A DNA stretch of 64,000 nucleotides from Rebecca billardiae RCC1528 (lineage: Eukaryota > Protista > Haptophyta). How positions within the stretch are numbered: the first letter of the stretch is position 1; each line of letters opens with the position of its first letter. Below the pieces are notes generated by a model that ran no database searches, was not told the DNA's origin, and saw only the letters and a list, made by a program, of their open reading frames with translations. The stretch spans positions 2,728,001-2,792,000 of the forward strand of contig OZ251230.1 in assembly GCA_965240325.2 (NCBI GenBank), read 5' to 3'. The translations under genes were made by a program, and so were the position numbers. Of this stretch, positions 21,501-60,061 are shown one piece after another.

Positions 21501-24500
21501 GTGGCGGGCTCGGTGGCGGGCGTGGCGGCGGTGATGGCGGCGGGCTCGGCGGCGGCGGGCTTGGCGGCGGGGACGGTGGCGGGCTCGGCGGTGGCGATGG
21601 TGGCGGCGATGGCGGCGGGGACGGCGGAGGCGACGGCGGCGGGCTTGGTGGCGGGCTCGGCGGGGGCGGGCTCGGCGGCGGGCTCGGCGGCGGTGAGGGT
21701 GGTGGGCTTGGCGGCGGGCGTGGTGGCGGGCTCGGCGGCGGGCTTGGCGGTGGCGATGGTGGCGGGCTTGGCGGTGGCGACGGCGGTGGTGAGGGCGGAG
21801 GGCTTGGCGGCGGCGATGGTGGCGGTGGGCTCGGCGGCGGGCTCGGCGGCGGGCTCGGCGGTGGCGACGGTGGCGGGCTTGGCGGCGGGCTAGGCGGCGG
21901 GCTCGGCGGTGGCGAAGGTGGTGGCGCGGGCGGCGGCGGGCTCGGCGGTGGCGATGGCGGCGGTGAGGGCGGTGGCGACGGTGGCGGCGACGGCGGCGGC
22001 GACGGCGGCGGCGACGGCGGCGGCGACGGTGGCGGGCTCGGTGGCGGCGGGCTCGGCGGGGGCGAGGGCGGTGGCGAGGGCGGCGGGCTGGGCGGCGGCG
22101 AGGGCGGCGGCGAGGGCGGCGGGCTCGGAGGTGGCCTGGGTGGCGGTGACGGCGGTGGTGATGGCGGAGGCGATGGTGGCGGGCTCGGTGGCGGTGAGGG
22201 CGGCGGGCTCGGCGGCGGGCTCGGTGGTGGCGACGGGGGCGGGCTCGGCGGTGGTGACGGCGGCGGGGAGGGCGGAGGGCTTGGTGGCGGCGATGGCGGT
22301 GGTGGGCTCGGCGGCGGGCTCGGCGGTGGTGACGGCGGCGGGCTCGGCGGCGGGCTTGGCGGAGGCGACGGTGGTGGGCTCGGCGGTGGCGATGGAGGCG
22401 GCGAGGGTGGCGGTGACGGCGGAGGCGATGGCGGCGGGCTTGGAGGCGGGCTTGGCGGGGGCGGGCTCGGCGGTGGGCTCGGCGGCGGGCTCGGCGGCGG
22501 GCTTGGCGGCGGTGAGGGCGGCGGGCTCGGCGGCGGGCTCGGCGGTGGCGACGGGGGCGGGCTCGGCGGTGGGGAGGGCGGTGGGGAGGGCGGAGGGCTC
22601 GGTGGTGGGCTGGGCGGCAGTGGGCTCGGGGGCGGGCTCGGCGGTGGCGACGGCGGCGGGCTCGGCGGCGGGCTTGGCGGTGGCGACGGTGGTGGGCTCG
22701 GCGGTGGCGATGGAGGCGGCGAGGGTGGCGGTGACGGCGGAGGCGATGGCGGCGGGCTTGGAGGCGGGCTTGGCGGGGGCGGGCTCGGCGGTGGGCTCGG
22801 CGGCGGTGAAGGCGGCGGGCCTGGCGGCGGTGAGGGCGGCGGGCTCGGCGGTGGACTTGGTGGTGGCGACGGTGGCGGGCCCGGCGGCGGTGACGGTGGT
22901 GGCGAGGGCGGAGGGCTCGGTGGTGGCGACGGAGGTGGGGACGGGGGCGGCGGGCTCGGAGGTGGGCTCGGCGGCGGCAAGGGCGGCGGGCTTGGCGGCG
23001 GGCTTGGCGGCGGCGGGCTCGGGGGCGGGCTTGGCGGTGGCGACGGTGGCGGGATCGGAGGTGGGCTCGGCGGTGGCGAGGGCGGTCGAGACGGCGGCGG
23101 ACTCGGCGGCGGGCTGGGAGGCGGCGGACTGGGCGGCGGGCTCGGCGGAGGCGAGGGTGGCGGGCTGGGCGGCGGGCTCGGTGGTGGACTGGGCGGCGGG
23201 CTCGGCGGCGGGCTCGGCGGCGGGCTGGGAGGCGGCGGGCTCGGCGGCGGGCTCGGCGGCGGGCTCGGCGGCGGGCTCGGCGGCGGCGACGGCGGCGGGC
23301 TTGGCGGTGGGCGAGGCGGCGGGCTCGGAGGCGGCGATGGTGGCGGGCTGGGCGGCGGTGACGGCGGCGGTGACGGCGGCGGCGGGCTCGGTGGCGGGCT
23401 CGGTGGCGGCGAGGGCGGCGGCGAGGGCGGCGGCGAGGGCGGCGGGCTCGGTGGCGAGCTCGGTGGCGGGCTCGGCGGTGGGCGCGGAGGCGGCGGACTG
23501 GGCGGTGGGCTCGGCGGAGGCGACGGCGGTGGGCTTGGCGGTGGCGAGGGCGGCGGGCTGGGCGGTGGGCTCGGCGGCGGGCTCGGCGGCGGCGATGGTG
23601 GCGGGCTGGGCGGTGGCGACGGCGGCGGTGAGGGCGGCGGTGACGGCGGCGGTGGCGAGGGGGGCGGGCTTGGAGGCGGCGAGGGCGGCGGCGACGGCGG
23701 TGGGCTCGGAGGCGGCGAGGGCGGTGGCGAGGGCGGCGGCGAAGGCGGCGGGCTCGGCGGAGGGCTCGGCGGCGGGCTTGGCGGCGGGCTCGGCGGCGGC
23801 GGGCTGGGCGGCGGGCTCGGCGGGGGCGAGGGCGGCGGGCTTGGCGGCGGGGAGGGCGGCGGAGGCGAGGGCGGCGGCGTGGGCGGCGGCGGCGACGGCG
23901 GCGGCGACGGCGGCGGCGGCGACGGCGGCGGCGAGGGCGGCGGCGACGGCGGCTGCGGCGGCAGGATCTCGACCGGCGGCAGCGCATCGCCCATCGAGCC
24001 GGATGCGAAGCCGATGTTGTCGGGGCTCCCCTGCCCCAGCTCGCCGTGCGAGTCCTCGCCCCAGCTGCGTGGCGTTGGCACACGGCGGGGCGGGGCGGCA
24101 AGGCGCGGGGGCGAGGGGCCGTGAGGCGCGGCGCGGCGCGGGGCGCGCACGTGCGCGGCTGTGCCGGCCGCAGCCGTCTCCACGCGCGGCGCGGCGGCAC
24201 GGCGGCGCGCTGCGCCGGCTGGCGCGCATCGACGCGCCTCCACTCCCGCAGCGCGGGCCAGCCAAGTCCTGCCCTAGCCCTGCCCTAGCCCTGCCCAGGC
24301 GCGGCACGCACGCGCAGCCCGCCACCGCGCCGCCGCGCGTGCCGGGCGGCGGTGCGCGCACCACTTGACGGTGCCGTCGTCGAGCAGCGCGCACACCGAC
24401 CTGTCGAGCGTGTCGAACGCGGCCACGGTGCGCCCCGAGCCCAGCGGGACGGTGGGCAGCGAGGCGCCCATCTCGCCGCTGTTGTCGCCGCGGTAGCTCG

Positions 24501-46691: not shown

Positions 46692-47753
46692 ATGGCGGTG
46701 TCATGGGGCACGGCGGCGCTGGGCACGGCGGCGGCGCTCGCGGCGGCGGCGGCGGCGGCGGTGCGCCGGCGCAACCGGCTCGCGTTCCGGCTGGCGGAGC
46801 ACTCCCTGCGCGGCAAGCACGTGGTGATCACCGGCGCCACCAGCGGCATCGGCTACGCGGTCGCCGAGGGCGCGGCGCGCGCGGGCGCCTCGCTCGTCGT
46901 GCTCGGCTGCCGCGACGCGCGCGCGGCGGAGGCGGCGTGCGCGCGCGTGCGCGCGCGCACGGCGCACGCGGCGGTGGTGCACGCCCCGCTCGACCTCGCC
47001 CACCCCGACTCGGTCCGCGCCTTCGCCGACGCGCTGGGCGGCGAGTCCGGGCTGGCGCGCGGCCGCGTGGACGTGCTCGTCAACAACGCCGGCGCCATGT
47101 TCCACTCGCGCGGCGCGGCGGCGTACGCGGACGCGGCGGGCGTGGCCGGCGCGTGCGAGCGGACGTACGCGACCAACTTCGTCGGCCACCTCGCGCTCAC
47201 CGTGCGCCTGCTGCCCCTCCTCCGCGCCGCGCGCGAGGCGAGCGGTGAGCGCGCGCGCGTCGTGCACGTCGGCTCGCGGCTCGAGCGGCGCGCGCCCGCG
47301 CTGCCCGCGGGCGCGGACGCGCCGCGCGCGCTGGACGCGCTGGTGGCGCCGGGCGCGTACGAGCCGTTCCGCGCGTACGCGCTCTCCAAGCTCGCGCAGA
47401 CCGCGTGCGCGCTCGAGCTCGGCCGCGCGCACGGCGCGTGCGTGCTGAGCGTCGTCGTCTCGCCCGGCATGGTGGCGACGCGGCTCTCGCGCGACCTGCC
47501 GCCCGTGCAGCGCGCGCTCGCGGCGCTGCTCGGGCCGCTGGTGCTGCGCTCGGCGGAGAAGGCGGCGGAGAGCGTGCTCTACGCGTGCGGCGCGCCGGAC
47601 GACGGCGCCATCCCCGCGTACGTGCGCGACTGCGCGCCCGAGCCGCCGTCGGCGCAGGCGGCCGACCGCGCGCTCGGCGCCGCGCTGTGGGAGGACGCGC
47701 TGCGCCGCGCGGGCGAGGGCCCGAGCCCACACCCTCGCCAGCCCCGACCCTAG
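46692..47753 (+). CDS. Short-chain dehydrogenase/reductase, retinol dehydrogenase-like (353 aa)
   Basis: VVITGATSGIG (TGxxxGxG), LDL, LVNNAG and YALSK (YxxxK); N-terminal membrane anchor. Confidence 0.92.
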   Translation: MAVSWGTAALGTAAALAAAAAAAVRRRNRLAFRLAEHSLRGKHVVITGATSGIGYAVAEGAARAGASLVVLGCRDARAAEAACARVRARTAHAAVVHAPLDLAHPDSVRAFADALGGESGLARGRVDVLVNNAGAMFHSRGAAAYADAAGVAGACERTYATNFVGHLALTVRLLPLLRAAREASGERARVVHVGSRLERRAPALPAGADAPRALDALVAPGAYEPFRAYALSKLAQTACALELGRAHGACVLSVVVSPGMVATRLSRDLPPVQRALAALLGPLVLRSAEKAAESVLYACGAPDDGAIPAYVRDCAPEPPSAQAADRALGAALWEDALRRAGEGPSPHPRQPRP

Positions 47754-48686
47754 CCCCGCGCGGCGGGAGGACGCGCTGCGGCGGCGCGGGCGGCGGCGGC
47801 GCGCGCGGCGGCCGCGGGGGCCGGCGGGGAGCCGGGGAGGCGCGGTGGATCGATCGGTGGGCGTCGCTGGCGGCGCGGGCGGCCAGCCGGCGCCGACCGC
47901 CCGCTCGCCCAGGGTGAGGTGCGCCGCGCGCCGCGCGCTCGCGCCCCGCCCGCGGGCCGGCTCGGCGGCATGGCTGCCTGCGGGCGGCGCTGGCGGAGTG
48001 ACGCGGCGTGGGCGGCGCGTCATCCGTCATCATCGATCCATCCGCGGCCGCCACTAAAGAGCCACGTGATGCTGGTACGCTGGCTCCAGTCTCGCACGCC
48101 GTCACGCCGTGGACGCATCGGTGATCGGTCTGCGGGCGGTGACGCGATCCGCGGTCGTGTCAGTACTGACTACTGTCATCAGTTCAACGGCAACGCGCCG
48201 GGGTGATGCCGCCGCATCACGCCGTCTGTTTATTTGATCCGCCGGGATCGGCCCCGGAGTACGTACGTACATGTCCATGACAAGACTCTTCAAGATGCAT
48301 CACATGTCAATCACTACTCATGGACATGGGCCATATGCCCGACCTGCCTCAAGGACAAGACAGTAGAGTGAAGAGTCTAACTCTAAAGGCGCTACTAAGC
48401 GCCGAACAGCTGACGCTGTGCCGTATACTTGTGCTTCGATGGCCGGCTTATCGATAACATCACTACAGTATCTTATCTCCTCCGAGACCAAGATGACAAT
48501 GCAAGGCGGCAAGACGTATCATCCTTGCCCGATCAACATCTGTACCCGCCCGATACTTGTAGATACTTGCCTCATGATGCGCGCCTGAAGGCTTGATGTG
48601 CGAACTGCGAAGCGCATCGAAGGCTGTGTGTTGAGACGGCCGCTCTCGCAGTGCCCGCGCTTCGGTCCTCGGGACGCGTCGCGATC

Positions 48687-51600
48687 ATGCCGACGCGTCG
48701 CGGCGTCGCGCACGCGGCGCTCGTCGCGGCGGCGCTCGCGCTCGCGGCCCGCCCCGTGGGAGGCGCCGCGGGCGCGGCCGCGCCGGAGGTGCACGTGCTC
48801 GGCCTCTTCCCGCTGAGCGTGCCCGGCGCGCACGGCGCGCAGCTCGCGCGCGCGGCCGAGCTCGCGGCCGGCCGCGTGTCCGCGTCCGCGGCGCTGCTGA
48901 ACGGCACGGCGCTGCGCATGCGCGTGCGCGACACGAACGGCTCGGAGGCGCGCGCGCTGGCCGAGGCGATCGACGCGGACGCCGCCCACCCGCTCCACGC
49001 CATCGTCGGCGCGCTCGACGCGGACGTGACGCGCGCGCTCGCCGCGTACGGCGGCGCGCGCGGCGTGCCGGTGCTGAGCTACGGCGCGAGCGCGCGCGAG
49101 CTGAGCGAGCCGGCGGCGCTGCCGCTCTTCGCGCGCGTCGTGCCCTCCGACGCGCTGCAGGCCCGCGCGCTCGCCGACGCGCTCGTCGGCCACCTCGGCG
49201 CGCGCCGGTACGCGCTGCTGCACGGCGCGGACGGCCGCTGGAGCGGCCGCGCCGCGCGGCTCGAGCTCGCGCTCGGCAGGGCGGGCGCCGAGCTGGGCGC
49301 GCGCGCGAGCGTGGAGCGCGGCGCGGACCCGACGGCGGCGCTGGGCGCGCTGCTCAACGCGAACGCGCGCGTCCTCCTCCTCGTCCTCCCGCCCGCGGAC
49401 ACGCGCGCCGCGCTGCTCGCGCTCGAGGCGGCGCGCGCGCTCGGCCCGCGCGCGCCGCGGCCGCGCGCGCTCGTGAGCGTGGGCGCGGAGGGGGCGGCGG
49501 CGGCGGCGGAGCTGTGGGCGGCGGGGGCGGCGGGCGAGGCCGAGGCGGCGCGGCTGCGCGGCGCCGCGGAGGGCATGCTCCTCGCCGCGCCCTCCACCGC
49601 GCACCGCGCCGCCGAGCCTCCGGCCGCCGCCGCCGCCGCCGCCGAGTTTTGCGAGCGCTGGGACGGCGACGCGGAGGTGCGGGCGCGCGGCTGGCCGACG
49701 TGCGCGGAGGAGGCGGCGGGCGGTCGACGCGTGCCGCCGCTCGTGCCGCACGCGCACGACGCGGTGCTCGGCGTGGCGCACGCGCTGCACGCCGTGTGCG
49801 AGCGCGCGGGCGGGCCGGCCGCGTGCGCCGACGCGCTGCGCGACGGCGGCGCGGTGCACGGCGCGCTGCTCGGCCTGTGCGCACGCGGCGGCGCCGACGG
49901 CGGCGCCGACGGCGCGCCGTGCGTGCGCGGCGCGACGGGCGCGCTGCAGCTCGACGGGCGCGGCGACCGCGTCGGCGCGTTCACGCTGCTCGCCGCGCGC
50001 GCCGCCGCCGCGGACGGCGCAGCCGGCCTCCGCCTGGAGCCGTGGGGGCGGTGGAGCGCGGGCGGCGGGTTTGCGAGCGCGCCCGGCTCGGAGCGGTGGG
50101 TGCGCTGGCCCGCGTGGGGCGAGGGCGAGGCGGAGGGCGGCGGCACGGGCGCGGACGGCGCGGGCGCGGGCGGCGGCGCGGCCGGCGGCGAGCCCGACGG
50201 CGCGTCGCGCGGCGGCGCCGGCCCCGCCGCGCTCCCCGACGACCTTGGCGAGCGTATCGGGCAGGTCGCGTTCGTGCTGGGCACGACGCTGGGCATGCTG
50301 TTCGCGATGGGGCTGATCTGCGTGTCGCAGGCGCTGCAGCGGCGCGCGCGCGTGCTGCTCGAGGCGGCGGACCTGCAGCGCAAGGCGGAGCACGAGCGGG
50401 TGTCGCGCGCGGTGCACGCCGTCACCTCCGTCTCCTTCTCGGTGTGCTTTGTCTGCTTCCGAGACTTCCGCCGCATGGGCAGGCTCGTGCCCCACGAGGA
50501 GATGCGCGAGGCCGGGCTGATCGTGACGTGCGACACGTACGAGGAGGTGGTGGCGTTTGCGCGCAGGCACCACTCCGTCTTCATCTCGCACCAGTGGTGC
50601 GCGCACCGCCAGCGCGCGCGGCGCGCGCGGCGCCGCCGCGCGCGCTCACGCGCCCTCGCGCGCGCGCCGCCGCTGGCGCTGTGACGCAACGCATGGCCGG
50701 GTGTGGGCGGCGCGTCCCTGCGCCACGCGCCTCTCCAGGCTCGGGCTGGGCGAGCCCGACCCGCACTGCGTGCACTTCCCCGCCATCGTCGCGGCGGTGG
50801 GCCAGCTCGCAGCGCGGCAGGACATGCGCGAGGAGGACGTCTACATGTGGGTGGACTACTGCTCGATCCCGCAGCGCAACCTCACGCTCAAGAGCATCAG
50901 CATCGGCTCGCTCGCCGTGTACGCGTCGGTGGTGCGCTACTTTGTGGTGATCGCGCCGCCCGCCACGCACGCGGACACGGGCCAGCGCTGCGACACGCGC
51001 ACGTACCAGCGGAGGGGCTGGTGCCGCCTCCAGCAGTGGGCGCGGTGCGCGCGCACCTCTTGCGCGCGCCGTGCCCGCGCCCACTGCGCGTCTCATCGCT
51101 CCGACTGGCTCTCGCGGACGCTCACCCCGCCGTCGCCTCCCTCGCGCGCGCGTGCGTGTGCGCGCGCGGCACGCGCGCAGCATGACGTTTGGCGGGCTGC
51201 AGCACATGTACGTGTACGACACGCCCGTGCCGGCCGGGCGGCGCAGCCGGCGGCTGACCGCCGAGAGCGTCGCCGACGCGCCGCCGCCCCTGCCGGCGCA
51301 GCGTTGCAGCGGCCTGCGCTCGATCCGCAACGAGCCGCAGTGGTACCACGACTCGATCGCCGTGTTCGAGGGCGAGTTCACGCTCGAGTCGGACAAGCCC
51401 AAGCTGGTGGACGCGGTGCTCGGGCTGTGGGCGCTCGCGCTGCACTACCAGCACCGGCCGGAGCAGCGCCGGATCGTCGAGCTCGTGCGCGCGCACCGCG
51501 AGGCCGTCTTCCCCGCACAATTCTTCGGCTCGCTCGTGGGCCTGCTCGAGCGGCGCATGCGCGAGGAGGGCTCGGACGCGCTGATCACGGCCAACGTGCA

Positions 51601-52420
51601 GCGGCGCGCGTCGTCCGTGCTGCCGCCCTCGCCCGCGCAGCAGCTCCACCGCTTCGGCGCGCACCACGGCCGGCGCCGCCCGCTCGACCTCGCGGACGCC
51701 GTCGACGGCGAGGACGACGGCGGCGCCGCGCCGCGCCGGCTCTCCGACGCCTCGCGCCGCTCCAGCTCGGACGCGGACGCGGAGGGCGGGGCGGAGGCGG
51801 AGGCCTCGGGGTGGGAGCGGCAGCCGCACGCGCACGGCACGCCGCTGCGGCTCGCGAGCGCGCCGCTGGCGCTGCTGCCCTCGCCGATGCGGCGCGCGCG
51901 CAGGCGGCTCTTCTCCTACACGGCGGAGGAGCAGGGCGGCGAGCGAGCCACGGCCGTCGACGACGAGCCCGACCCCGAGCTCGGCCACGCGAGGCCAGCG
52001 GCGCCGGCGGCGTGCGGCGGCGTGCGCGCGGCGCCGTCGAGCGCCGCCTCGCCCGCGGCCGCGCGCCGGCGCAAGGGCGGCCGCGTCGCGCCCGGCTGCT
52101 CGCCCGGCGCGCGCCGGCGCGCCGAGACGGTCAACGTCGCGTCGATCGCGTCGCTCACGTCGGCGCCCGCCGAGCGCGCCGACGGCGGCCGCCCGGCCGG
52201 CGGGGCCGGCGGCGGGGCGTGGGCGCCGCTCGCGTCGCTGGGCGAGCGCGCCTCCGGCCGCGGCTCGTCGGGCGGCGAGACGACGCTCGGCGACGCGGCC
52301 GAGCGCGCGCGCGCCACGCTCGCGGCGGAGGCCGGCGCCGGCGGTGCTGACGAGGCCGAGCTGGGCGCGTGCGCCGAGAGCAGCAGCACGAGCTCCAGCC
52401 TCGCCGAGGTGGTAGTCTGA
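48687..52420 (+). CDS. Single-pass receptor: signal peptide, ANF-receptor/Venus-flytrap domain, TM helix, HET/TIR-like domain, disordered tail (~1,151 aa)
   Basis: Exons 48687-50596, 50739-51044 and 51181-52420 (3,456 nt in frame). Ectodomain: VLGLFPLS...AIVGA...VPVLSYGASARELSE...PLFARVVPSDALQARAL. TM: IGQVAFVLGTTLGMLFAMGLICV. Cytoplasmic: FISHQW...EPDP...WVDYCSIPQ...YAS...YQRRGWCRLQQWA...VFEGEFT. Confidence 0.8.
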
Positions 52421-52440
52421 CTACAGCAGCACTACTGCGC

Positions 52441-52482
52441 TATATACACACACACACACACACATGCATGCATATATATATA
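52441..52482. repeat. (AC)n/(AT)n microsatellite between convergent genes
   Basis: tatatacacacacacacacacacatgcatgcatatatatata. Confidence 0.85.
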
Positions 52483-52693: not shown

Positions 52694-53311
52694 CTAGTCG
52701 TCCACGACATCGACGTCGATCACCCCGCCCGGCCCGTCGGCCGCGCCCGGCACCGCGTCGTGCGCGAACGCGGCCTCGGCGGCGAGCGCAGGCGGCGAGA
52801 GCGACGGGCGCACGCGGTCCGCGCCCATCACGCCCGCGCTCTGGAAGACGATGACAAACTCCTTCTCGGGGTCGTACTCTTTGATGCGCGTCTCGATCGC
52901 CGCGTACCCCTCGCCGTCCTCGCCCGCCGACGCCGTCAGCTTGGAGAGCGGCACGTACATGCCGGCGACGTCGCCCGACTTGCCGCCCGCGCTCGCGTCG
53001 TCGTTCACAAAGATGGCGCCGCGGCCCATCTGCTCGAAGCCCTTCCACGAGAGCGTGGCCCAGCGCTTGCCGCGCTCGCGCACGGCCGCCTGGTACGCGC
53101 GCTCCCACGCGCCGCCCGAAGTCTCCGCCGCCTGCGCGCGGACGGCCGCGCGCCGCGCGATCGGCGACCGCGCGGCCGCCGCCGGCCGCGCAAGCGGGCG
53201 CGCGCAGCCGAGCGCCGAGGCGAGGCGGGAGGCGGCGAGCGGCGGCGCGTGCGAGCCCGCAACGGCGGCGGCGAGGAGCGCGGCGGCGCACGCGCGCGCG
53301 CGGGTGGGCAT
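52694..53311 (-). CDS. Small protein with bipartite (signal + transit-like) leader; core resembles cyanobacterial CcmS-related proteins (205 aa)
   Basis: Hydrophobic signal then an Ala/Arg/Ser-rich acid-free stretch ending VRAQA; core SWKGFEQMGRGAIFV...MYVP...IKEYDPEKEFVIVF. Family call is from memory and tentative. Confidence 0.6.
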   Translation of the reverse strand: MPTRARACAAALLAAAVAGSHAPPLAASRLASALGCARPLARPAAAARSPIARRAAVRAQAAETSGGAWERAYQAAVRERGKRWATLSWKGFEQMGRGAIFVNDDASAGGKSGDVAGMYVPLSKLTASAGEDGEGYAAIETRIKEYDPEKEFVIVFQSAGVMGADRVRPSLSPPALAAEAAFAHDAVPGAADGPGGVIDVDVVDD

Positions 53312-53405: not shown

Positions 53406-53524
53406 ATAACCGCGCGCGTCGCGCTCCGCCTTATGGCGGTCCGGTGTTTACGTTGGGCGGCTGCCTAGCTTGCCTGGGGCCGCCAGACGTCACGGGGGGC
53501 CGGGCGGCGAGACAGCGCCCGCCC
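53406..53524 (-). repeat. Split direct repeat B2 (119 bp)
   Basis: Identical by eye to 54027-54145 (offset 621). Confidence 0.92.
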
Positions 53525-53589
53525 CCACGCGGACGCTGACTCAAGCCGCACCCTGCCCCGGCGCGGCGATCCAACGCCGAGGGAGGGCG

Positions 53590-54026
53590 GGCGGGAGGCG
53601 GAGGAGCGCAGCTGGTTGTCCGTGCGGCTGCTCGGCGCCAAGCGTGGCCCGTCGGCTGGGTTTGGTAGTCGGGCGGCGGTCCGGTCGGCTGTCGGGCAGG
53701 GCGAGGTGCGCCGTGCGGTCGGGCGGGAAAGCGGACGGCTGCTGGGCGAAACTCGCTCCTGTTCGCCAAAGCCGGTCACTGCCCGTCAACTCCCGGCGCG
53801 CGCTCACTTTTCTGCGGTCCGCGCCAAAAGCGAGCTGCCACACGCTCGGAACGCTGTCCGGGGGCGCGCTGCGAGCTCCGAGCTCCGAGCCCGTCCGGGC
53901 GGGGGTGCGGTCGGAGGGGCGCTGGAGGAGGGTATCGGGCGGCGGCGAAGCGGCGCCGGCAGTCATAACGCGATAACCGCCGCAGACTGCCAAACCCGCC
54001 ACTCCCGTCGCGTCGGCCATCGCCCC
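53590..54026 (-). repeat. Split direct repeat A2 (437 bp)
   Basis: Matches 59625-60061 (offset 6035); one mismatch seen (53690 T vs 59725 G). Confidence 0.92.
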
Positions 54027-54145
54027 ATAACCGCGCGCGTCGCGCTCCGCCTTATGGCGGTCCGGTGTTTACGTTGGGCGGCTGCCTAGCTTGCCTGGGG
54101 CCGCCAGACGTCACGGGGGGCCGGGCGGCGAGACAGCGCCCGCCC
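54027..54145 (-). repeat. Split direct repeat B1 (119 bp), directly abutting A2
   Basis: Junction ...gccatcgcccc|ataaccgcgcg... on the plus strand. Confidence 0.92.
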
Positions 54146-54259
54146 ACAGGGGCGCAGCGCCAGGCGCCACGCCGGCATGGGCGGCGTCGGCCGGCGCGGT
54201 CGAGGCCAGGCCCGGCCCCGACCCCCAGAGACGCTGCGCCCGGCCACGCCCCGACGCAC

Positions 54260-54700
54260 GCCGTCAGCGCCAAGCGCGTGCCGTCGGGCGGGGCAGCTCC
54301 CGGGAAGTACGTGCGGGGCGCAGGCCCCGCCCACCGCCCCGCAGCGGTGATCTCGGCCGCGGGAAGCCCCAGGAACGGCCAGCGTCGCCACGGCCGAGCG
54401 TCGAACCGAGTTGGCGCCAACACACGTTGTGGGAGCCCCAGCGCCCGACACTCATCGTGCAGCCACGCCAGATACGCCGCGCGAAAGCCTCGCACGCGCG
54501 CCAACCCGCCCGGTGTCGGCCGTCGACGGCGGGCAGCACCCCGAGCTCCGCGAAGCGACGTCCAGCCAGCGTGCGTAGCCCTGAATCGCCATGCGCCCCT
54601 TGGACCTTGGACGCGAAGGGCGAAGCGCCGAAGCCCGCTGTCCGGCTGTGGCAAACCGCCGGGCCGCCTGCGCTGTGGGAGCGATGGCGGCCGGTGGAAG
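54260..54700 (-). pseudogene. Frameshifted tyrosine recombinase C-terminal remnant
   Basis: Switching frames twice gives AAYLAWLHDECRALGLPQR-VGANSVRRSAVATLA-FLGLPAAEITAAGRWAGPAPRTY, matching the YR H-x-x-R...I...GRW...Y box with His replaced by Asn. Confidence 0.7.
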
Positions 54701-54777
54701 CGGCGGGGAGTAGGCGACGCACGCCGCGCGAACGAGGACGGTCGCGCGGCACGCGAGCGACGGCGGACGCGCCGCGG

Positions 54778-55560
54778 ATGATCGGCGCGCACGCATGACG
54801 ATCGGCGCATGATGATCGGCGCGCGCGCATGATCGGCGCATGATGATCGGCGCGCGCGCATGATGATCGGCGCGCGCGCATGATGATCGGCGCGCGCGCA
54901 TGATGATCGGCGCATGATGATCGGCGCGGGCGCATGATCGGCGCATGATCGGCGCATGATGATCGGCGCGCGCGCGTGATCGGCGCATGATGATCGGCGC
55001 GGGCGCATGATCGGCGCATGATCGGCGCGTGATGATCGGCGCGCGCGCATGATCGGCGCATGATCGGCGCATGATGATCGGCGCGGGCGCATGATCGGCG
55101 CATGATCGGCGCATGATCGGCGCATGATCGGCGCATGATCGGCGCATGATGATCGGCGCGCGCGCATGATCGGCGCATGATGATCGGCGCGGGCGCATGA
55201 TCGGCGCATGATCGGCGCATGATCGGCGCATGATGATCGGCGCGCGCGCATGATCGGCGCATGATGATCGGCGCGGGCGCATGATCGGCGCATGATCGGC
55301 GCATGATCGGCGCATGATCGGCGCATGATCGGCGCATGATGATCGGCGCGCGCGCATGATCGGCGCATGATGATCGGCGCGCGCGCATGATGATCGGCGC
55401 ATGACGATCGGCGCGCGCGCATGATCGGCGCAAGATGACCGGCGCGCGCGCATGATGATCGGCGCGCGCGCATGATGATCGGCGTGCGCGCGTGATGATC
55501 GGCGCGCGCGCATGATGCTCGGCGCATGTTGACCGGCGCGCGCGCATGATGAGCGGCGCG
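54778..55560. repeat. Minisatellite with 11-bp core ATGATCGGCGC and +ATG / +GCGCGC / +GGGCGC variants
   Basis: Directly visible; lies inside the retroelement between RNase H and the YR remnant. Confidence 0.95.
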
Positions 55561-55770
55561 GACGGTGGCGCGCGGCGCCGCCACCCGCCGCCGCGGCGTC
55601 GAAGGCAGCAGCAGCGAACGCCGATGGTTCTTGGCTGGGCCAGGCGAGCATGCCGGGGGCACGCAGCAGGCGTGCACGATCGGCACTAGCAGGGTCAAGG
55701 GGCAGGTCGGCCGGCTGAGTCAGCACTGCTGACCCGCCCCGCTGGCTGCTGAGCGGCGGCGACCGGGCGT

Positions 55771-57435
55771 TCAGGGCAGGCCGTGCTGATCGCCGGCCGC
55801 CGCGAAGGACGCGGCGGCCTCATCCCGGAGCTCGGGCCAGTACTCGGGAAGCGCCGCGCGGAAGCACCGGCTGATTGCGTCCGCCACCCGATTGCGCGCC
55901 CCAGGCACATGCTTGCAGAGCAGCGTGCTGGATGTCTCCGCCGCGAGCAGGGCGAGGTCTTGCAGCAGGCAGTTGAGCACCGGTCGGTGGGGCACAGACA
56001 TGCGCGACAGCCACGCCACGGATGCAGAGTTATCACACAGTAAGAGGAGGTGCACAGCGGAGCGGCCGGCGAGCCAGCGCAAGCCGGCGAGCAGGACGCA
56101 CAAGCACTCGAGCTCGTTGATGTCCCACGCCTCGCCGGCCGGCACGAAGGCGCGCAGGTCCCACGCGGCGACATGGCCCGCCGACGACGCCGCCCCACCG
56201 CGCCCCGTGGAGAGGGCGGCGTCCGTGGCCACCGCCAGCCGCTCCGAGGGTCGCACGTACAGCTGCCGCCGACACGAGCCCCGCTCGAGCAGCCGCGCGA
56301 AGAAAGCGCACTCGCGCGGCAGCAGCACCCCCAGGGGCGCCACGAGGGTGCCGGACGCAGCGAACGCATCGTGCCGCGCATAGAGGAGGTCGAGGAAGGG
56401 GCGGATGAACGGGCGAACCGCGGGCTGTATCCGAGCGATCCAGCCGAGCTTGCCGATGAGCGAGCTGAGCTCCGGGCGCGTCACGCGGCTGCCGAGCAGC
56501 GTGAGCAGCGCCGGGAACCACTTGGCGCGCTTCCGCTCGGGTAGAGACACCGAGCCCTGGACCGCGTCAATGACGACGCCAAGCAGCTCGATGTGCTGGC
56601 ATGCGGGCACGATCTTGGTCGGCTTGGCCGACGGCGGCAGACCCGCGGCGCGCAGCGTCGAGCAGTAGAGCTGGAATGCCCGATCGAGGTCCCCCCGGTG
56701 CGAGCTCCACCCGAAACCGTCATCGACAAAATTCTTGAGCTTGAAGCGCAGCTCCCCCGACCAGCGCGCCACGAACGCGTGCCGCAGCAGATCTGAGAGC
56801 CGGCAAAACAGGAACGGCGCGGACGCGGCGCCGAAGGGGAGCGAGGTGTACACGTAGTAGGCGCCCTCCCACCAAATGCAGAGCAGCCACAGATCCTCCG
56901 GGCGCACGGCGACGCGCGTGTATGCCGCGTCGATGTCCACCTTGAAGATCCAGGTGCCGGGGGTCAGATCGGCCAGGAGCTCGTCCAGCGACTCAAAGGT
57001 GAACCGCGGCGCGCGGATGTCGGCGTTCACGCCCGAGGCCGTCATGTCCACGATGAGGCGGAAGTCGTCCTCGTCCTTCGGTACGCAACCGAGCGGCGAC
57101 ACCGCCACTGGCCGCGGCAGGGGCCGGCCGCCGCGCGCCGGCCCCGCCAGCACGCCCGATGACACATACTCGGCGAGCCGCGCGCGCACAAACTCGGGCT
57201 GCGCCAGCGAGGAACGGTGGTTGGGACGGAACCGCGACACGCGCGCGCCGCGGTAGAGCAGATCGACGCCGTCACGCAGCTCCACGGACAGGTCAACGCC
57301 GGTGAAGGCATGGATGAAGGACGCCAGCGCCACGTAGTTGCGCTGCATGGCGTTGGGCACGAGACTGTGTGCGAGGTCAGCGCGCAGGCCGGTGCGCGCG
57401 ACCATCTCGGCGGAGGTGATGGGCGGGCGAGTCAT
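55771..57435 (-). CDS. pol: Reverse transcriptase-RNase H (DIRS/Ngaro type)
   Basis: SPLGCVPKD...FRLIVDM, FKVDIDAAY, LPFGAASAPFLF, NFVDDGFG; RNase H residues VATDAA, INELEC, CDNSASV, HVPGARNRVADAISR. Frame is open throughout; the true start is uncertain. Confidence 0.93.
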   Translation of the reverse strand: MTRPPITSAEMVARTGLRADLAHSLVPNAMQRNYVALASFIHAFTGVDLSVELRDGVDLLYRGARVSRFRPNHRSSLAQPEFVRARLAEYVSSGVLAGPARGGRPLPRPVAVSPLGCVPKDEDDFRLIVDMTASGVNADIRAPRFTFESLDELLADLTPGTWIFKVDIDAAYTRVAVRPEDLWLLCIWWEGAYYVYTSLPFGAASAPFLFCRLSDLLRHAFVARWSGELRFKLKNFVDDGFGWSSHRGDLDRAFQLYCSTLRAAGLPPSAKPTKIVPACQHIELLGVVIDAVQGSVSLPERKRAKWFPALLTLLGSRVTRPELSSLIGKLGWIARIQPAVRPFIRPFLDLLYARHDAFAASGTLVAPLGVLLPRECAFFARLLERGSCRRQLYVRPSERLAVATDAALSTGRGGAASSAGHVAAWDLRAFVPAGEAWDINELECLCVLLAGLRWLAGRSAVHLLLLCDNSASVAWLSRMSVPHRPVLNCLLQDLALLAAETSSTLLCKHVPGARNRVADAISRCFRAALPEYWPELRDEAAASFAAAGDQHGLP

Positions 57436-57501
57436 AGCGAGCGGCGCGCCGCGGAACGCGGCGGGCACCGACAGGGGATCTCGTCGCGCGCCCACCGCCT
57501 C

Positions 57502-59609
57502 CTAGACGCGGCCCACGCCCGTGTGCTGCTGCACGTGCGCTGTCTCGGCGTGCGCGCCGGCCAAGTGGCCAAGGCTCCCGCACAGAGCGCACTTGGTGGC
57601 GTGCGCGAGCGTGAAGTTGTGCTGCATCTGCGCAGACGGTTGGCCGCCGGCCGACCGGTACGCGGCGAACAGCGGGCACGCCGCCGCGGAGCAGTCGCCG
57701 AATAGCTGGTGCCGTAGGCAGCCGTGCGCGCGGAAGACGCGGTGGTTGGCCTCCGAGAGCAGGGGCCGCCCGCTCGCGTCGCACACACCCCCGTACCGCG
57801 CCAGCTCGCGCGCCAGCGTCAGCGGCGGCACGCCCCCCGCAGAGGCGGCGCCCGGGAACGGTTGCGGCAGCGTCCGCGGCGGCCCGCCTGGCGGCGGGGG
57901 CGGCGGGCCGGGAGGCGGCGCCTGCGGCCCCGGCGGGTACGGCGCCGGTGTGTACGGCGCCGGCCCGGGCGCCCAGGCCGAACCCGCCGGCGGCACGTAC
58001 GTGAGCGCGAGCGGCGCGGGCCCGGGCTGCGCCCCCTGTACCGGCGGCGCCGGCGGGGCCGGCGCTGCCGCCTGCAGCCCCTGCGGGTACGGCGCCGGCG
58101 GGCACAGCGCCGGGCGGGGCGCCCAGGACGATCCTGCCGAGGGTGCGCACGTGAACGAGAGCGGCACGGGCCCGTGCGGCGCCACCTGCATCGGCGCCGA
58201 CCACGACCAGCAGCCCCACTCCGCTGCGCCGGGCGCCGCCCCGCCAAAGCCGGGCGACAGGTCCTGCACCATCAGCGACGGCGGCGGCGGCGGAATCGGC
58301 ATGCTCCCACCGTAGACGCGCATCAGCGGGCGCATGGCAAACTTGTCATGGAAGGGGTTGTCGTTCTTGTAGCAGTCGAAGAACGGCTCCCGCCCGCCAC
58401 CGATGCTCGCCACCAGCGCCGCCACGCCCGAGCGCGCGTCGAGCACCCGCCCGAGGCTCTCCGAGAATTCAGAGTGGAACTGTGCCGCCGCCCGCCAGTC
58501 GCGCGCCTCAGCGAGCTGCATCACGAAGCCCCTGTACTCGCGCAGCACCTCGGCGTCACCCGCGCGCGTGCAGAAGCCCTCGGCCTGCTCGACGAGCAGT
58601 ATGAAGTGGAGCTGGCTGAGGAGCTGGTAGGCCTCGCGCAGCTCGCCCTTCGTGTTGAAGTAGACGCTTCGATCGACCTGCGCGTGCGGCACCTCAGCCA
58701 TGTTGAAGGACTCCCAGACGACCGAACCCGCCGCGTTCGCCGGCACGCCCAAGCCGCGCCGCATGGACGAAAACGCCCCGCGAGCCGGGAAGCTCGGCCT
58801 CCCCCCCCCGGTCCCACGGAGTTGGCCGCCCGCGCCGCCCGCGAGCGCGCAAGCGTTCGCGAACTCGTGCGCGGCCCCCGCAAGGAAGCCAGCCCCACCG
58901 AAGGGGACGGGATGCGGCACGAGCGAGCTGGGCGGGGCGAGGGGCGCCGCCGCGTCCGGCGCCGGCCGGACGCCCCAGGGCGGCGGCCGCGGCGGCGGGA
59001 CAGAGGTGGGCCCCGTCGGTGCGCCGTCGGCGGGCGGCGCGCCCGAGTGGCCACCGACCGCCCCATCACCCGCACCGTTGCCGTGGACGCCGCGAAGGAA
59101 GTCAGTGAGGCTGTTCGCGAGGTCGGGTGGTAGGCCAGTCGGAATGCCCGGCTGGCCAGCGGGCGCGGCCGGGGGGGCGGGTGCCTGCGGCTGCGCAGCA
59201 GCCGCCGTCGACGCGGCGCCGGCCGCTCGCCCGGGCGCGGGCGCGGGAGCAGCCCCCGCCGTCGTCCTGGCACCGGCCGCCGGCGCGGTCGCGGGCGGCG
59301 GCTGGACCGGCAGCGGGCCGAGCTGCTGCACCGGCGCGGCAGGCGGCAGGGTACTTGCTTGGCGGCCACCCGCGCGCCCACCCCGGCCCCGACCGCGGCC
59401 CCCGCCGCCGCGCCCACGAGCGCCGAGGACCTGCTGGTTGACGACGCGGCAGGCGGCAGGGTACTTGCTTGGCGGCCACCCGCGCGCCCACCCCGGCCCC
59501 GACCGCGGCCCCCGCCGCCGCGCCCACGAGCGCCGAGGACCTGCTGGTTGACGACGGCCGCTGCCGCCGCGCGGCGCCGCGACACGCGTTGGACTGCAGG
59601 CACCGCCAT
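57502..59609 (-). pseudogene. gag: Gag-like ORF1, frameshifted by a 110-bp tandem duplication
   Basis: C-terminal C...C...C...H...CALCGSLGH finger, Pro-rich linker and RG-rich N-terminus. ATG 59609 is out of frame unless one copy of 59335-59444 / 59445-59554 is removed. Confidence 0.75.
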
Positions 59610-59624
59610 GTCGCCTGTCGGGAC

Positions 59625-60061
59625 GGCGGGAGGCGGAGGAGCGCAGCTGGTTGTCCGTGCGGCTGCTCGGCGCCAAGCGTGGCCCGTCGGCTGGGTTTGG
59701 TAGTCGGGCGGCGGTCCGGTCGGCGGTCGGGCAGGGCGAGGTGCGCCGTGCGGTCGGGCGGGAAAGCGGACGGCTGCTGGGCGAAACTCGCTCCTGTTCG
59801 CCAAAGCCGGTCACTGCCCGTCAACTCCCGGCGCGCGCTCACTTTTCTGCGGTCCGCGCCAAAAGCGAGCTGCCACACGCTCGGAACGCTGTCCGGGGGC
59901 GCGCTGCGAGCTCCGAGCTCCGAGCCCGTCCGGGCGGGGGTGCGGTCGGAGGGGCGCTGGAGGAGGGTATCGGGCGGCGGCGAAGCGGCGCCGGCAGTCA
60001 TAACGCGATAACCGCCGCAGACTGCCAAACCCGCCACTCCCGTCGCGTCGGCCATCGCCCC
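59625..60061 (-). repeat. Split direct repeat A1 (5' end of the retroelement)
   Basis: Matches 53590-54026. Confidence 0.92.

What the first reader, a model, noticed from the sequence alone, without database searches (positions are those of the whole stretch)
48687..52420. Toll-like logic with new parts: Venus-flytrap sensor, single TM, HET/TIR-like effector
Seen only after removing two introns: a signal peptide, a GABA-B/mGluR/ANF-type ligand-binding domain, one TM helix, a short helical linker, then FISHQW...PDP...WVDYCSIPQ...YAS...RGWCRL. Known: this pattern parallels the fungal HET domain (S-Y/H-x-W, W-x-D-x-x-C-I-x-Q, R-G-W-x-x-Q-E), a TIR-related cell-death effector. Flytrap domains normally couple to 7TM bundles, ion channels or guanylyl cyclases. 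Inference: a small-molecule-gated, dimerisation-activated immune, cell-death or nucleotide-signalling receptor in an alga. I know no description of this architecture.
Basis: partly seen in the sequence, partly recalled or inferred. Interest (0 to 1): 0.88.

Follow-up and report, generated by a model that had tools for sequence, protein, structure and literature searches.

The report
Flytrap receptor with HET/TIR-like tail
A very GC-rich alga has an intact three-exon gene for a single-pass surface receptor that joins a glutamate/GABA-receptor-type "Venus flytrap" sensor to an inside domain with the fold of fungal HET and TIR immune domains. It belongs to a large, unannotated receptor family of haptophytes and dinoflagellates, but this copy has glutamine where almost every relative has the likely catalytic glutamate.

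Summary
Exons 48687-50596, 50739-51044 and 51181-52420 encode 1151 aa. In order these are a signal peptide, an ANF/class-C flytrap domain (Pfam 8e-27; nearest solved chains GABA-B2 and mGluR), one TM helix, a ~105-aa juxtamembrane module, a ~265-aa conserved domain and a disordered tail.

Homologues align without a break across both splice junctions, and GC3 is 98% in all three exons, so this is one gene.

The cytoplasmic domain belongs to a large family: 1209 clusters at 50% identity, from haptophytes and dinoflagellates. None of the 141 family members listed with precomputed Pfam carries a domain call on it. HET (PF06985) is the only recurrent Pfam hit (19 of 58 members, mostly below threshold). 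AlphaFold models (pLDDT 96) match fungal HET models (TM 0.5-0.6). Their nearest solved folds are TIRs and nucleoside deoxyribosyltransferases (Z 6-7.4, middling).

In relatives the same module sits behind many other sensors: other solute-binding proteins, dCache, DOMON, FG-GAP, LRR, CHASE.

This copy keeps 11 of 12 invariant residues but has Gln735 where 225 of 227 relatives have Glu, so it may be non-catalytic.

A 2025 Gephyrocapsa huxleyi paper already describes a leucine-binding-like ectodomain + TM + TIR protein. This scan has also found the same domain in this genome fused to H-NOX, 7TM and lectin modules. Function is untested and no RNA data were available.

The parts
48687..52420 (+). 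Whole gene, start codon to stop codon; 3 exons, 1151 codons plus stop
48687..50596 (+). Exon 1 (residues 1-636 plus the first two bases of Trp637)
   Evidence: GC3 0.98; ORF 48651-50684
50597..50738 (+). Intron 1, 142 nt, GTGCGCGC...CCAG; holds an in-frame TGA at 50682-50684
   Evidence: junction confirmed by homologues reading FxSHQWLG
50739..51044 (+). Exon 2 (residues 637-739, both end codons split); core of the HET/TIR-like domain
   Evidence: phmmer gave 1209 hits at E<=1e-3; HET E 0.017
51045..51180 (+). Intron 2, 136 nt, GTGCGCGC...GCAG
   Evidence: junction confirmed by homologues reading EQWARMTxGGL
51181..52420 (+). Exon 3 (residues 739-1151 and the stop codon)
   Evidence: GC3 0.98; homology runs to about residue 870
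48687..48773 (+). Signal-peptide-like N-terminus (about residues 1-29: two Arg, an Ala/Leu/Val core, then PVGGAAG)
   Evidence: hydropathy and sequence; no signal-peptide predictor was available
48783..50021 (+). Venus-flytrap (ANF_receptor / type-I periplasmic-binding-protein) ectodomain, about residues 33-445
   Evidence: PF01094 8.1e-27, PF13458 2.4e-13; GABA-B2, mGluR, CaSR chains at E about 1e-5
50022..50264 (+). Gly/Ala-rich low-complexity stalk between the flytrap and the membrane (residues 446-526)
   Evidence: sequence; no Pfam hit
50265..50327 (+). Single transmembrane helix (residues 527-547), followed by QRRAR
   Evidence: Kyte-Doolittle peak 2.16; homologues have a TM about 100-114 aa before FxSHQW
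50328..50561 (+). Juxtamembrane helix and N-terminal extension of the conserved domain (residues 548-625), with the invariant His-Glu (H603, E604)
50562..51574 (+). HET-fold / TIR-like domain (residues 626 to about 870, interrupted by both introns): alpha/beta core plus C-terminal helical subdomain
51031..51033 (+). Codon CAG = Gln735, at the family's almost invariant Glu (RGWCRL-E-QW)
   Evidence: 58 of 58 aligned homologues and 225 of 227 family proteins have Glu; the other 11 invariant and all 14 near-invariant residues are kept
51575..52417 (+). Ala/Gly/Arg/Ser-rich tail (residues 871-1151), probably disordered, not conserved
   Evidence: no Pfam hit; homologue alignments end at about 865-935

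Best explanation
This is an intact gene for a type-I single-pass receptor of a large haptophyte/dinoflagellate family. The family shares a module made of a TM helix, a ~105-aa juxtamembrane piece and a ~265-aa HET-fold (TIR-superfamily) domain, placed behind interchangeable sensor ectodomains. Here the sensor is a class-C/ANF-type Venus flytrap.

Shown:
- the gene model and the domain order
- family membership
- the nearness to HET and the TIR/NDT-like fold of the core
- the Glu-to-Gln change.

Inferred:
- It works like a natriuretic-peptide receptor or a Toll-type receptor. A small ligand closes the flytraps of a dimer, the TM and juxtamembrane helices move, and the cytoplasmic domains are brought into a signalling-competent arrangement.
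- In the family at large the invariant S-H-x-W, D, D, Q and R-x-W-x-R-x-E residues suggest an enzyme. The most likely activity is a TIR-like N-glycosidase acting on NAD+ or a related nucleotide, with the Glu four residues after the Trp as the catalytic residue.
- This copy has Gln735 there, so on its own it is probably catalytically dead or much weakened. It would then act as a ligand-binding, non-catalytic partner or regulator of Glu-bearing paralogues (compare GABA-B2 or pseudo-enzyme receptor subunits), unless the base is a sequence error.

My odds:
- one gene with this architecture: 0.9
- domain homologous to HET/TIR: 0.8
- family is enzymatic on NAD+-like substrates: 0.4
- this copy is non-catalytic in vivo: 0.5.
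For: Gene model:
- Homologues align continuously across both junctions at E about 1e-86.
- GC3 is 0.98 in all exons.

Sensor: PF01094 8e-27 and GABA-B2/mGluR chains.

Family:
- 1209 representatives at E<=1e-3.
- The TM lies a fixed 100-114 aa before FxSHQW in long members.
- Ectodomains among 45 long members: Peripla_BP_6 9, ANF 7, FG-GAP 3, DOMON 3, dCache 3, plus SBP_bac_1, Phosphonate-bd, OpuAC, LRR, Laminin_G_3, peroxidase and beta-helix.
- CHASE-named and MHYT members turn up in dinoflagellate and environmental hits.

HET link:
- PF06985 is the only recurrent Pfam hit: 19 of 58 members, best 1.3e-5, with one of ten tested above the gathering score at 23.1 vs 22.5 bits. It is collinear over profile positions 4-105.
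- Fungal HET clusters match the models at TM 0.51-0.57 over 185-212 residues, and a fungal TPR/Ank cluster at 0.63.

TIR-type fold, from models with pLDDT 95.8 and 96.4:
- Whole domain: SARM1 TIR is top at Z 6.2.
- Core: nucleoside deoxyribosyltransferases Z 6.7-7.4, SARM1 6.6, TIR-1 6.2, MyD88 6.1, and MAL, SpbK, ThsB and SEFIR at 5-6.
- Foldseek top hit is RPS4 TIR, probability 0.89, E 0.025.

HET-TIR homology is published (PMC4986451).

Glu to Gln. A Glu-to-Gln change at the TIR catalytic Glu abolishes product formation in a Chlamydomonas TIR (bioRxiv 10.64898/2026.04.20.719644).

A similar receptor-type TIR protein is induced early in virus infection of G. huxleyi (PMC12489294).
Against: - No transcript evidence for this genome: no sequencing runs were listed.
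- No enzymatic activity has been reported for any HET domain in the papers I could search.
- Structural scores to TIRs are middling (Z 5-7, Foldseek E>0.02). By the tool's own calibration this can reflect only a common alpha/beta arrangement. Deoxyribosyltransferases score as well as TIRs.
- No TIR Pfam or PADLOC model hits any member.
- That Glu735-equivalent sits where the TIR catalytic Glu sits rests on secondary-structure order and on the W-x3-E motif, which I recall from SARM1 and plant TIRs. It is not a residue-level superposition.
- Dimerisation and the ligand are pure inference.
- Gln735 could be an assembly error or an allele.
Confidence: 0.6

Rival explanations
1. It is an ordinary active family member. 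Gln735 is a sequencing or assembly error, or a rare allele, and the real protein has Glu like its relatives.
For: A single base (C at 51031) separates CAG from GAG. All other 25 conserved positions are intact. The reading frame is perfect with GC3 0.98, so there is no sign of decay. Extreme GC content makes base-calling errors more likely.
Against: There is no positive evidence of an error. Reads could not be inspected because no runs were listed. Pseudo-enzyme paralogues are common in expanded receptor families.
Confidence: 0.2
2. The domain is a protein-protein scaffold rather than an enzyme, as classically assumed for animal TLR/IL-1R TIRs and proposed for HET by Dyrka et al. 2014. Ligand binding nucleates homotypic HET/TIR-like assemblies that recruit soluble paralogues (Ank-, LRR-, MORN- or TPR-linked). 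In that case Gln735 matters little.
For: Dyrka et al. proposed adaptor-type function for HET. Many soluble proteins with the same fold and repeat domains exist in haptophytes and could serve as partners. This copy tolerates Gln.
Against: A set of 12 invariant polar and aromatic residues, with Glu in 225 of 227 members, is more typical of an active site than of an interface. Recent work finds catalysis even in TLR TIRs.
Confidence: 0.2
3. It is a nutrient or infochemical sensor, not an immune or cell-death receptor. The family is a general signal-transduction output of haptophytes and dinoflagellates that turns binding of amino-acid-like solutes (and, in relatives, phosphonate, betaine, gases and so on) into a nucleotide or Ca2+-mobilising second messenger.
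For: The family's sensors are mostly classic small-molecule sensor domains: type-I and type-II solute-binding proteins, OpuAC, Phosphonate-bd and dCache, CHASE-named and MHYT, H-NOX. Some members carry EF-hands after the domain. No relative was found in viral or prokaryotic collections by motif scan.
Against: LRR, FG-GAP, Laminin_G, Ig and beta-helix ectodomains look more like macromolecule binders. In G. huxleyi, receptor-type TIR genes respond within 0.5 h of virus addition. HET in fungi is a cell-death domain.
Confidence: 0.3
4. The gene model is wrong: the ectodomain and the cytoplasmic part are separate genes, or the locus is a pseudogene.
For: There is no RNA evidence. The exon-1 ORF runs on to a stop 88 nt into intron 1, so an unspliced transcript would give a truncated receptor of 677 codons counted from the ORF's GTG start at 48651.
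Against: - At least 45 homologues, including an MMETSP transcript and annotated Prymnesium parvum proteins, have ectodomain, TM and domain in one product with the same spacing.
- The TM and juxtamembrane module encoded in exon 1 belongs to the conserved unit that continues in exons 2-3.
- No low-GC spacer lies inside the gene.
- The frame is intact for 1151 codons.
Confidence: 0.04

Closest known systems
Receptor-type TIR proteins of Gephyrocapsa (Emiliania) huxleyi, e.g. cogent1101_i1 (PMC12489294, New Phytol 2025)
   Same: A haptophyte protein with an extracellular region resembling leucine-binding and EGF-like domains, one TM helix and an intracellular TIR-type domain with a conserved Glu. 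Family members here include Peripla_BP_6 + EGF_Teneurin + this domain (P0066).
   Different: I could not obtain that protein's sequence (no supplement is held), so membership of the same family is likely but untested. The paper calls the domain TIR by HHsuite probability. Here no TIR Pfam model hits and HET is the nearest family. This copy has Gln instead of the Glu.
Fungal HET domain (PF06985; HET-E, TOL, PIN-C, HET-6)
   Same: Collinear blocks: S-[YH]-x-W, W-x-D-x-x-[CS]-I-x-Q, and R-G-W-x-x-x-E with Glu four residues after Trp (HET consensus from memory). HET is the only recurrent Pfam hit. Predicted folds match over about 200 residues, including the helical C-terminal part (TM 0.51-0.57).
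   Different: Most members score below Pfam's threshold. HET proteins are cytosolic, often at the N-terminus of NLRs, and are not attached to ectodomains through a TM. The taxa differ (haptophytes and dinoflagellates versus fungi). This copy lacks the Glu.
TIR domains (SARM1, plant TNL TIRs, MyD88, bacterial ThsB) and Toll/IL-1 receptors
   Same: Ectodomain, one TM and a TIR-like domain give Toll-like topology. The core has the beta-A to alpha-E order of a TIR, and the nearest solved folds include SARM1, TIR-1, MyD88, MAL, SpbK and RPS4. The W-x3-E motif lies at the start of the helix after strand C (my knowledge of SARM1 and plant TIRs).
   Different: There is no sequence-level hit to any TIR model. 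Z is only 5-7. The domain has an extra N-terminal strand-helix extension and a C-terminal helical subdomain. The sensor is a flytrap, not LRR or Ig.
Natriuretic peptide receptor A/B and other single-pass ANF_receptor enzymes
   Same: An ANF_receptor flytrap, a single TM and a cytoplasmic catalytic-type domain. This is the closest mechanistic analogue for how a flytrap dimer can drive a one-helix receptor.
   Different: The output there is a kinase-homology domain plus guanylyl cyclase. Here none of these is found and a HET/TIR-like domain takes their place.
Class C GPCRs (GABA-B, mGluR, CaSR)
   Same: They hold the closest solved relatives of the ectodomain. GABA-B2 is also a precedent for a non-signalling-competent partner subunit.
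   Different: No 7TM bundle: one membrane-length TM helix by hydropathy. There is no cysteine-rich domain; the stalk is Gly/Ala-rich.
Nucleoside 2-deoxyribosyltransferases / MilB-type N-glycosidases
   Same: They are the best structural neighbours of the core (Z 6.7-7.4). They are also Glu-dependent N-glycosidic bond enzymes of the same Rossmann-like assemblage as TIR (my knowledge).
   Different: 6-12% identity, no sequence signal, soluble bacterial enzymes. The match is no better than to TIRs within the tool's error.

Membership tests
ANF_receptor / type-I periplasmic-binding-protein fold (PF01094, PF13458) | Score above Pfam's gathering threshold | tested here: met
   94.6 bits vs 25.4 (E 8.1e-27); Peripla_BP_6 50.9 vs 31.7
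ANF_receptor / type-I periplasmic-binding-protein fold (PF01094, PF13458) | Similarity to solved flytrap modules | tested here: met
   GABA-B2, mGluR2/8 and CaSR chains, E 1.7e-5 to 1e-3, residues 30-292. The second lobe is covered only by Pfam's second stretch. The ectodomain's structure was not predicted.
Class C GPCR | Seven-helix membrane domain after the flytrap | tested here: not met
   One membrane-length hydrophobic segment after the signal peptide (residues 527-547) by hydropathy; no 7tm_3 hit
Receptor guanylyl cyclase (NPR type) | Kinase-homology and guanylyl cyclase domains after the TM | tested here: not met
   No such Pfam hit in exons 1-3
HET (PF06985) | Score above Pfam's gathering threshold (22.5 bits) | tested here: inconclusive
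   Exon 2 alone scores 15.9 bits, E 0.017. The spliced domain could not be submitted by reference. Among homologues 19 of 58 hit at E<1 (best 1.3e-5), and of ten tested singly one passes, at 23.1 bits.
HET (PF06985) | Collinear conserved blocks (S-Y/H-x-W; W-x-D-x-x-C/S-I-x-Q; R-G-W..E) | tested here: met
   Matches cover profile positions 4-96, 5-84 and 45-105 in order. The motifs lie on invariant columns. The third block's equivalence rests on my recall of the HET consensus.
HET (PF06985) | Fold like fungal HET proteins | tested here: met
   TM 0.51/0.50 over 185 residues to a 100% PF06985 cluster, and 0.57 over 212 residues to another HET cluster. Both sides are predicted models.
HET (PF06985) | Glu of the R-G-W-x-x-x-E block | tested here: not met
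   Gln735 in this gene; Glu in 225 of 227 relatives
TIR (PF01582, PF13676, PF08937, PF10137, PF18567) | Sequence match to a TIR model | tested here: not met
   No TIR family among the Pfam hits of 58 members at E<=1. No TIR chain in the PDB profile search at E<=10. No PADLOC TIR model.
TIR (PF01582, PF13676, PF08937, PF10137, PF18567) | Flavodoxin-like beta-A/alpha-A ... beta-E/alpha-E fold superposable on solved TIRs | tested here: inconclusive
   SARM1 Z 6.2-6.6 (rmsd 3.7-4.2 over 104-106 residues), MyD88 6.1, TIR-1 6.2; Foldseek RPS4 E 0.025, probability 0.89. The scores are middling and tie with deoxyribosyltransferases.
TIR (PF01582, PF13676, PF08937, PF10137, PF18567) | Catalytic Glu at the start of helix C | tested here: not met
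   The family has an invariant Glu in the second turn of the helix after strand C, but this copy has Gln735. Residue-level superposition on a TIR was not possible with these tools.
TIR (PF01582, PF13676, PF08937, PF10137, PF18567) | NAD+ cleavage or cADPR-isomer production | not testable with these tools
   Needs biochemistry
Haptophyte/dinoflagellate 'TM + FxSHQW...RGWCRLEQW' receptor family (unnamed) | Full-length alignment of the TM, juxtamembrane and domain module, with TM about 100-114 aa before FxSHQW | tested here: met
   blastp E 1e-86 to 1e-50 over residues about 530-870. The TM at 527 lies 105 aa before F632.
Haptophyte/dinoflagellate 'TM + FxSHQW...RGWCRLEQW' receptor family (unnamed) | The 12 invariant residues | tested here: inconclusive
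   11 of 12 are kept and Glu is replaced by Gln735; 14 of 14 near-invariant residues are kept

The most novel reading that the evidence does not exclude
The HET/TIR-like module is a major, so far unnamed signal-output domain of haptophytes and dinoflagellates. It would be a receptor-coupled nucleotide N-glycosidase or ADP-ribosyl-cyclase-type enzyme, wired behind flytraps, other solute-binding proteins, dCache, CHASE, H-NOX and 7TM sensors in the way cyclases and kinases are wired in other lineages. It would therefore serve general chemosensing, not only immunity. Within that system this gene would be a naturally Glu-less (Gln735) flytrap subunit that works as a ligand-binding, non-catalytic partner of active paralogues, as GABA-B2 does for GABA-B1.
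Probability: 0.2. Interest if true: 0.9.

Novelty: new variant of a known kind. Interest (0 to 1): 0.6.

Why it matters
Haptophytes and dinoflagellates drive ocean blooms, yet how they sense chemicals, viruses and neighbours is largely unknown. This gene shows that a glutamate/GABA-receptor-type flytrap can be wired through one helix to a HET/TIR-superfamily domain.

The same cytoplasmic module is reused behind many sensor types in more than a thousand protein clusters. None of the 141 members listed with precomputed Pfam carries a domain call on it.

If the module is an NAD+-type enzyme, it would give these algae a receptor-to-nucleotide-messenger (or receptor-to-cell-death) pathway. That would bear on bloom termination, virus resistance and Ca2+ signalling, and it would supply tractable material for the still unknown biochemistry of fungal HET domains.

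The natural Glu-to-Gln copy is a ready-made control, or a candidate pseudo-enzyme subunit.

Tried and rejected
1. The search for homologous proteins with the exon-1 ORF found nothing. The 8000 word-sharing candidates were swamped by Ala/Gly-rich low complexity. This says nothing about orthologues.
2. Sequencing runs: none was listed for the gene or for the intron region, for RNA or any kind. Read laying was therefore not used, and neither splicing nor base 51031 could be checked in reads.
3. No paralogue lies in this 64-kb window by tblastn.
4. The profile search of PDB sequences gave only a chance-level CdiI hit. PADLOC gave one stray Avs2 hit. NCBIfam gave nothing for the cytoplasmic part.
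5. Motif scans of viral contigs and of bacterial and archaeal genomes found no relative. I dropped the ideas of a recent prokaryotic or giant-virus origin and of a viral decoy.
6. The supplement of PMC12489294 is not held, so identity with the G. huxleyi receptor could not be tested.
7. I could not run a profile-profile comparison against HET or TIR alignments, because no HET or TIR sequences could be fetched by reference. I also could not submit the spliced protein to Pfam or AlphaFold, because it has no reference. The closest full-length homologue (P0013, 48% identical in the domain) was modelled instead.
8. Separate genes or a pseudogene: rejected on homology, GC3 and the intact frame.
9. 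Class C GPCR and receptor guanylyl cyclase: rejected (one TM, no cyclase).
10. The ectodomain is only weakly similar to other flytrap members of the family (one 40-bit hit). No orthologue with the same ectodomain was identified.

Full report
**Observation**

The stretch 48687-52420 is a high-GC block (65-91% per 100 nt) between two 48-57% GC spacers. The ORF from the ATG at 48687 runs to a stop inside what I take as intron 1.

This leaves one natural model:
- intron 1 at 50597-50738
- intron 2 at 51045-51180
- both donors read G|GTGCGCGC and both introns end in CAG
- the product is 1151 aa.

Two independent checks support the model. First, GC at third codon positions is 0.98 in each exon in the predicted phase, while the introns show no such periodicity. 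Second, the spliced protein aligns without a gap across both junctions to database proteins. It reads FISHQW|LG where they read FxSHQWLG, and QQWAR|MTFGGL where they read EQWARMTxGGL. Blastp E-values reach 1e-86 over residues about 530-870.

No sequencing run could be listed for this DNA. There is therefore no transcript evidence from this organism, and read laying was not used.

**Anatomy**

- Residues 1-29 look like a signal peptide: two Arg, an Ala/Leu/Val core, then a small-residue end. No predictor was available.
- Residues about 33-445 are a Venus-flytrap module. ANF_receptor scores 8.1e-27 and Peripla_BP_6 2.4e-13. The nearest solved chains are GABA-B2, mGluR2/8 and CaSR, with E from 1.7e-5 upward.
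- A Gly/Ala-rich stalk (446-526) leads to the only membrane-length hydrophobic segment beyond the signal peptide (527-547), which is followed by QRRAR.
- Residues 548 to about 870 are the conserved cytoplasmic unit.
- Residues 871-1151 are an unconserved, low-complexity tail.

**The cytoplasmic unit is a large family**

Exon 2 alone (101 aa) finds 1209 representatives of 50%-identity clusters at E<=1e-3 and 501 at E<=1e-10.

An alignment of 58 full-length domains (A1) has 12 invariant residues. In this protein's numbering they are E604, F632, S634, H635, W637, D644, D676, Q682, R729, W731, R733 and Glu at position 735. There are 14 near-invariant residues as well.

Named members come from these taxa:
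- haptophytes: Prymnesium parvum KAL1499064.1, P. polylepis, Isochrysis galbana, Chrysotila carterae
- dinoflagellates: Symbiodinium microadriaticum, Durusdinium trenchii, Prorocentrum cordatum, Pyrodinium bahamense
- an MMETSP transcript whose name is cut at 'Nocti'.

All named members are called 'hypothetical' or are named after their ectodomain. In the precomputed Pfam lists of the 141 different members returned by the two searches, none carries a domain call over this region.

Motif scans found no relative in viral contigs or in bacterial and archaeal genomes.

**A modular receptor family**

In 45 homologues with long N-terminal parts, a TM segment lies about 100-114 residues before FxSHQW. 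Here the distance is 105.

Their N-terminal parts carry the following domains:
- Peripla_BP_6 (9) and ANF_receptor (7)
- FG-GAP propellers (3), DOMON (3), dCache_1 (3)
- SBP_bac_1, Phosphonate-bd, OpuAC and SBP_bac_8
- Laminin_G_3, LRR, Ig-like domains, a beta-helix and a peroxidase.

CHASE-named and MHYT-carrying members also occur. Some members have EF-hands after the domain. Structure searches of the ESM Atlas also find the fold in soluble haptophyte proteins joined to ankyrin, LRR_6 ('NLRC3-like'), MORN and H-NOX domains.

Flytrap-type ectodomains are thus the commonest single class, and the window's gene is one of them. Its ectodomain is only weakly similar to the others (one 40-bit hit), so I found no orthologue.

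**What the domain is**

By sequence, HET (PF06985) is the only Pfam family that recurs. It hits 19 of 58 members at E<1, with a best E of 1.3e-5. Of ten members scanned singly, one scored 23.1 bits against the 22.5 threshold. The matches are collinear over profile positions 4-105. Exon 2 of this gene gives 15.9 bits. No TIR model and no PADLOC model hits, and a profile search of PDB sequences gives nothing.

AlphaFold2 models of the closest homologue's domain (P0013:590-876, 48% identical to ours) and of its core are very confident (pLDDT 95.8 and 96.4).

Against predicted structures, the whole ~265-residue unit matches fungal HET clusters (TM 0.51-0.57 over 185-212 residues). It also matches a fungal TPR/Ank cluster, which I take to be NLR-like from its repeat domains, at TM 0.63.

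Against solved structures:
- The whole domain's best match is the SARM1 TIR: Z 6.2, rmsd 3.7 over 104 residues.
- The core's neighbours are nucleoside 2-deoxyribosyltransferases (Z 6.7-7.4), SARM1 (6.6), TIR-1 (6.2), MyD88 (6.1), and MAL, SpbK, ThsB, SEFIR, DprA and LOG-type proteins at 5-6.
- Foldseek ranks the RPS4 TIR first (E 0.025, probability 0.89) and the list is rich in TIRs.

By the tool's calibration these scores are middling. They show a TIR/NDT-type alpha/beta core, not proven homology. Homology of HET to TIR is a published inference (Dyrka et al. 2014, PMC4986451), and that paper also noted HET homologues in Haptophyceae.

My reading is that this is a distinct branch of the HET/TIR superfamily, closer to HET. 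It has an N-terminal strand-helix extension with an invariant His-Glu and a C-terminal helical subdomain.

**The glutamate**

In the family the block reads R-G-W-C-R-L-E-Q-W. The Glu lies four residues after the Trp, in the second turn of the helix that follows strand C. From memory, the same W-x3-E spacing holds for HET (RGWTLQE), plant TIRs (SxWCLxEL) and SARM1 (DWVHKEI), where that Glu is catalytic.

In this gene the codon at 51031-51033 is CAG, giving Gln735. The other 11 invariant and all 14 near-invariant residues are kept, and the frame and codon bias are perfect. The gene is therefore not decaying.

In bona fide TIRs a Glu-to-Gln change abolishes product formation (E264Q in a Chlamydomonas TIR; bioRxiv 10.64898/2026.04.20.719644).

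**Mechanism (inferred)**

The nearest working analogues are natriuretic-peptide receptors (ANF flytrap, one TM, enzyme) and Toll/IL-1 receptors (ectodomain, one TM, TIR). I propose that ligand-driven closure of flytraps in a dimer repositions the rigidly spaced juxtamembrane module. The cytoplasmic domains are thereby brought into an active assembly.

For the family, the invariant polar constellation argues for catalysis, most likely N-glycosidic cleavage of NAD+ or a related nucleotide. No HET enzymology exists in the papers I could search.

For this copy, Gln735 predicts loss of that chemistry. It would then be a ligand-binding, non-catalytic partner or regulator, unless the base is an error.

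Whether the pathway serves immunity or cell death, or general chemosensing, is open. The sensor repertoire leans towards small-molecule sensing. The G. huxleyi data lean towards early virus response (PMC12489294).

**Comparison with what is known, and novelty**

[quoted passage not shown] One example, cogent1101_i1, has a leucine-binding/EGF-like ectodomain, a TM helix and an intracellular TIR with Glu836. This is very probably the same kind of protein: a member here, P0066, has Peripla_BP_6 + EGF_Teneurin + this domain. I could not test identity because no supplement is held.

The architecture is therefore not undescribed. I found none of the following in the papers I searched:
- the family's size
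- its reach into dinoflagellates
- its HET affinity
- its fixed TM-to-domain spacing
- its many sensor partners
- the Gln variant.

This scan has already met the same domain elsewhere in this genome, fused to H-NOX, 7TM/GPCR and lectin modules. This very stretch was also read in another window (s1-336799).

I class it as a new variant of a known kind (Toll-like and NPR-like single-pass receptors; HET/TIR superfamily), with interest 0.6.

**Limits**

- The spliced protein has no reference, so Pfam and AlphaFold were run on its exons and on homologues.
- No reads were available.
- No residue-level superposition on a TIR was possible.

Noticed in passing
window 1-4000 and 16000-24000: Blocks of 84-87% GC with a strong G-over-C skew (+0.33 to +0.44) on the + strand. 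They overlap the giant Ser-Pro-rich surface-protein genes noted by another agent (s1-357882).
   Followed up: no
window 52697-53311 (-): A 205-aa ATG ORF just downstream, on the opposite strand, with an Ala/Arg-rich N-terminus that looks like a targeting peptide. It has no Pfam hit at E<=0.01 and is of unknown function.
   Followed up: partly
window 46704-48023 (-): A 440-aa ORF upstream, very Arg/Ala-rich, with no Pfam hit. It may be a frame artefact of the extreme GC content rather than a gene.
   Followed up: partly
window 52440-52480: A (CA)n then (AT)n microsatellite lies in the 50% GC spacer right after the stop codon. The low-GC spacers on both sides of the gene make handy gene-boundary markers in this genome.
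   Followed up: no
proteins P0027 and P0193 (database homologues): Some family members carry EF-hand motifs directly after the HET/TIR-like domain. This hints at a Ca2+ link for the family.
   Followed up: no
proteins P0185, P0186, P0182, P0183, P0187 (database homologues): Symbiodinium and Durusdinium members are named 'CHASE domain-containing'. Unnamed environmental members carry MHYT (PF03707). Sensor modules of bacterial type are thus wired to the same eukaryotic output domain.
   Followed up: partly
window 53406-60061: Earlier notes of the scan place an Ngaro/DIRS-like retrotransposon here, 1 kb downstream of the receptor gene. I did not examine it.
   Followed up: no
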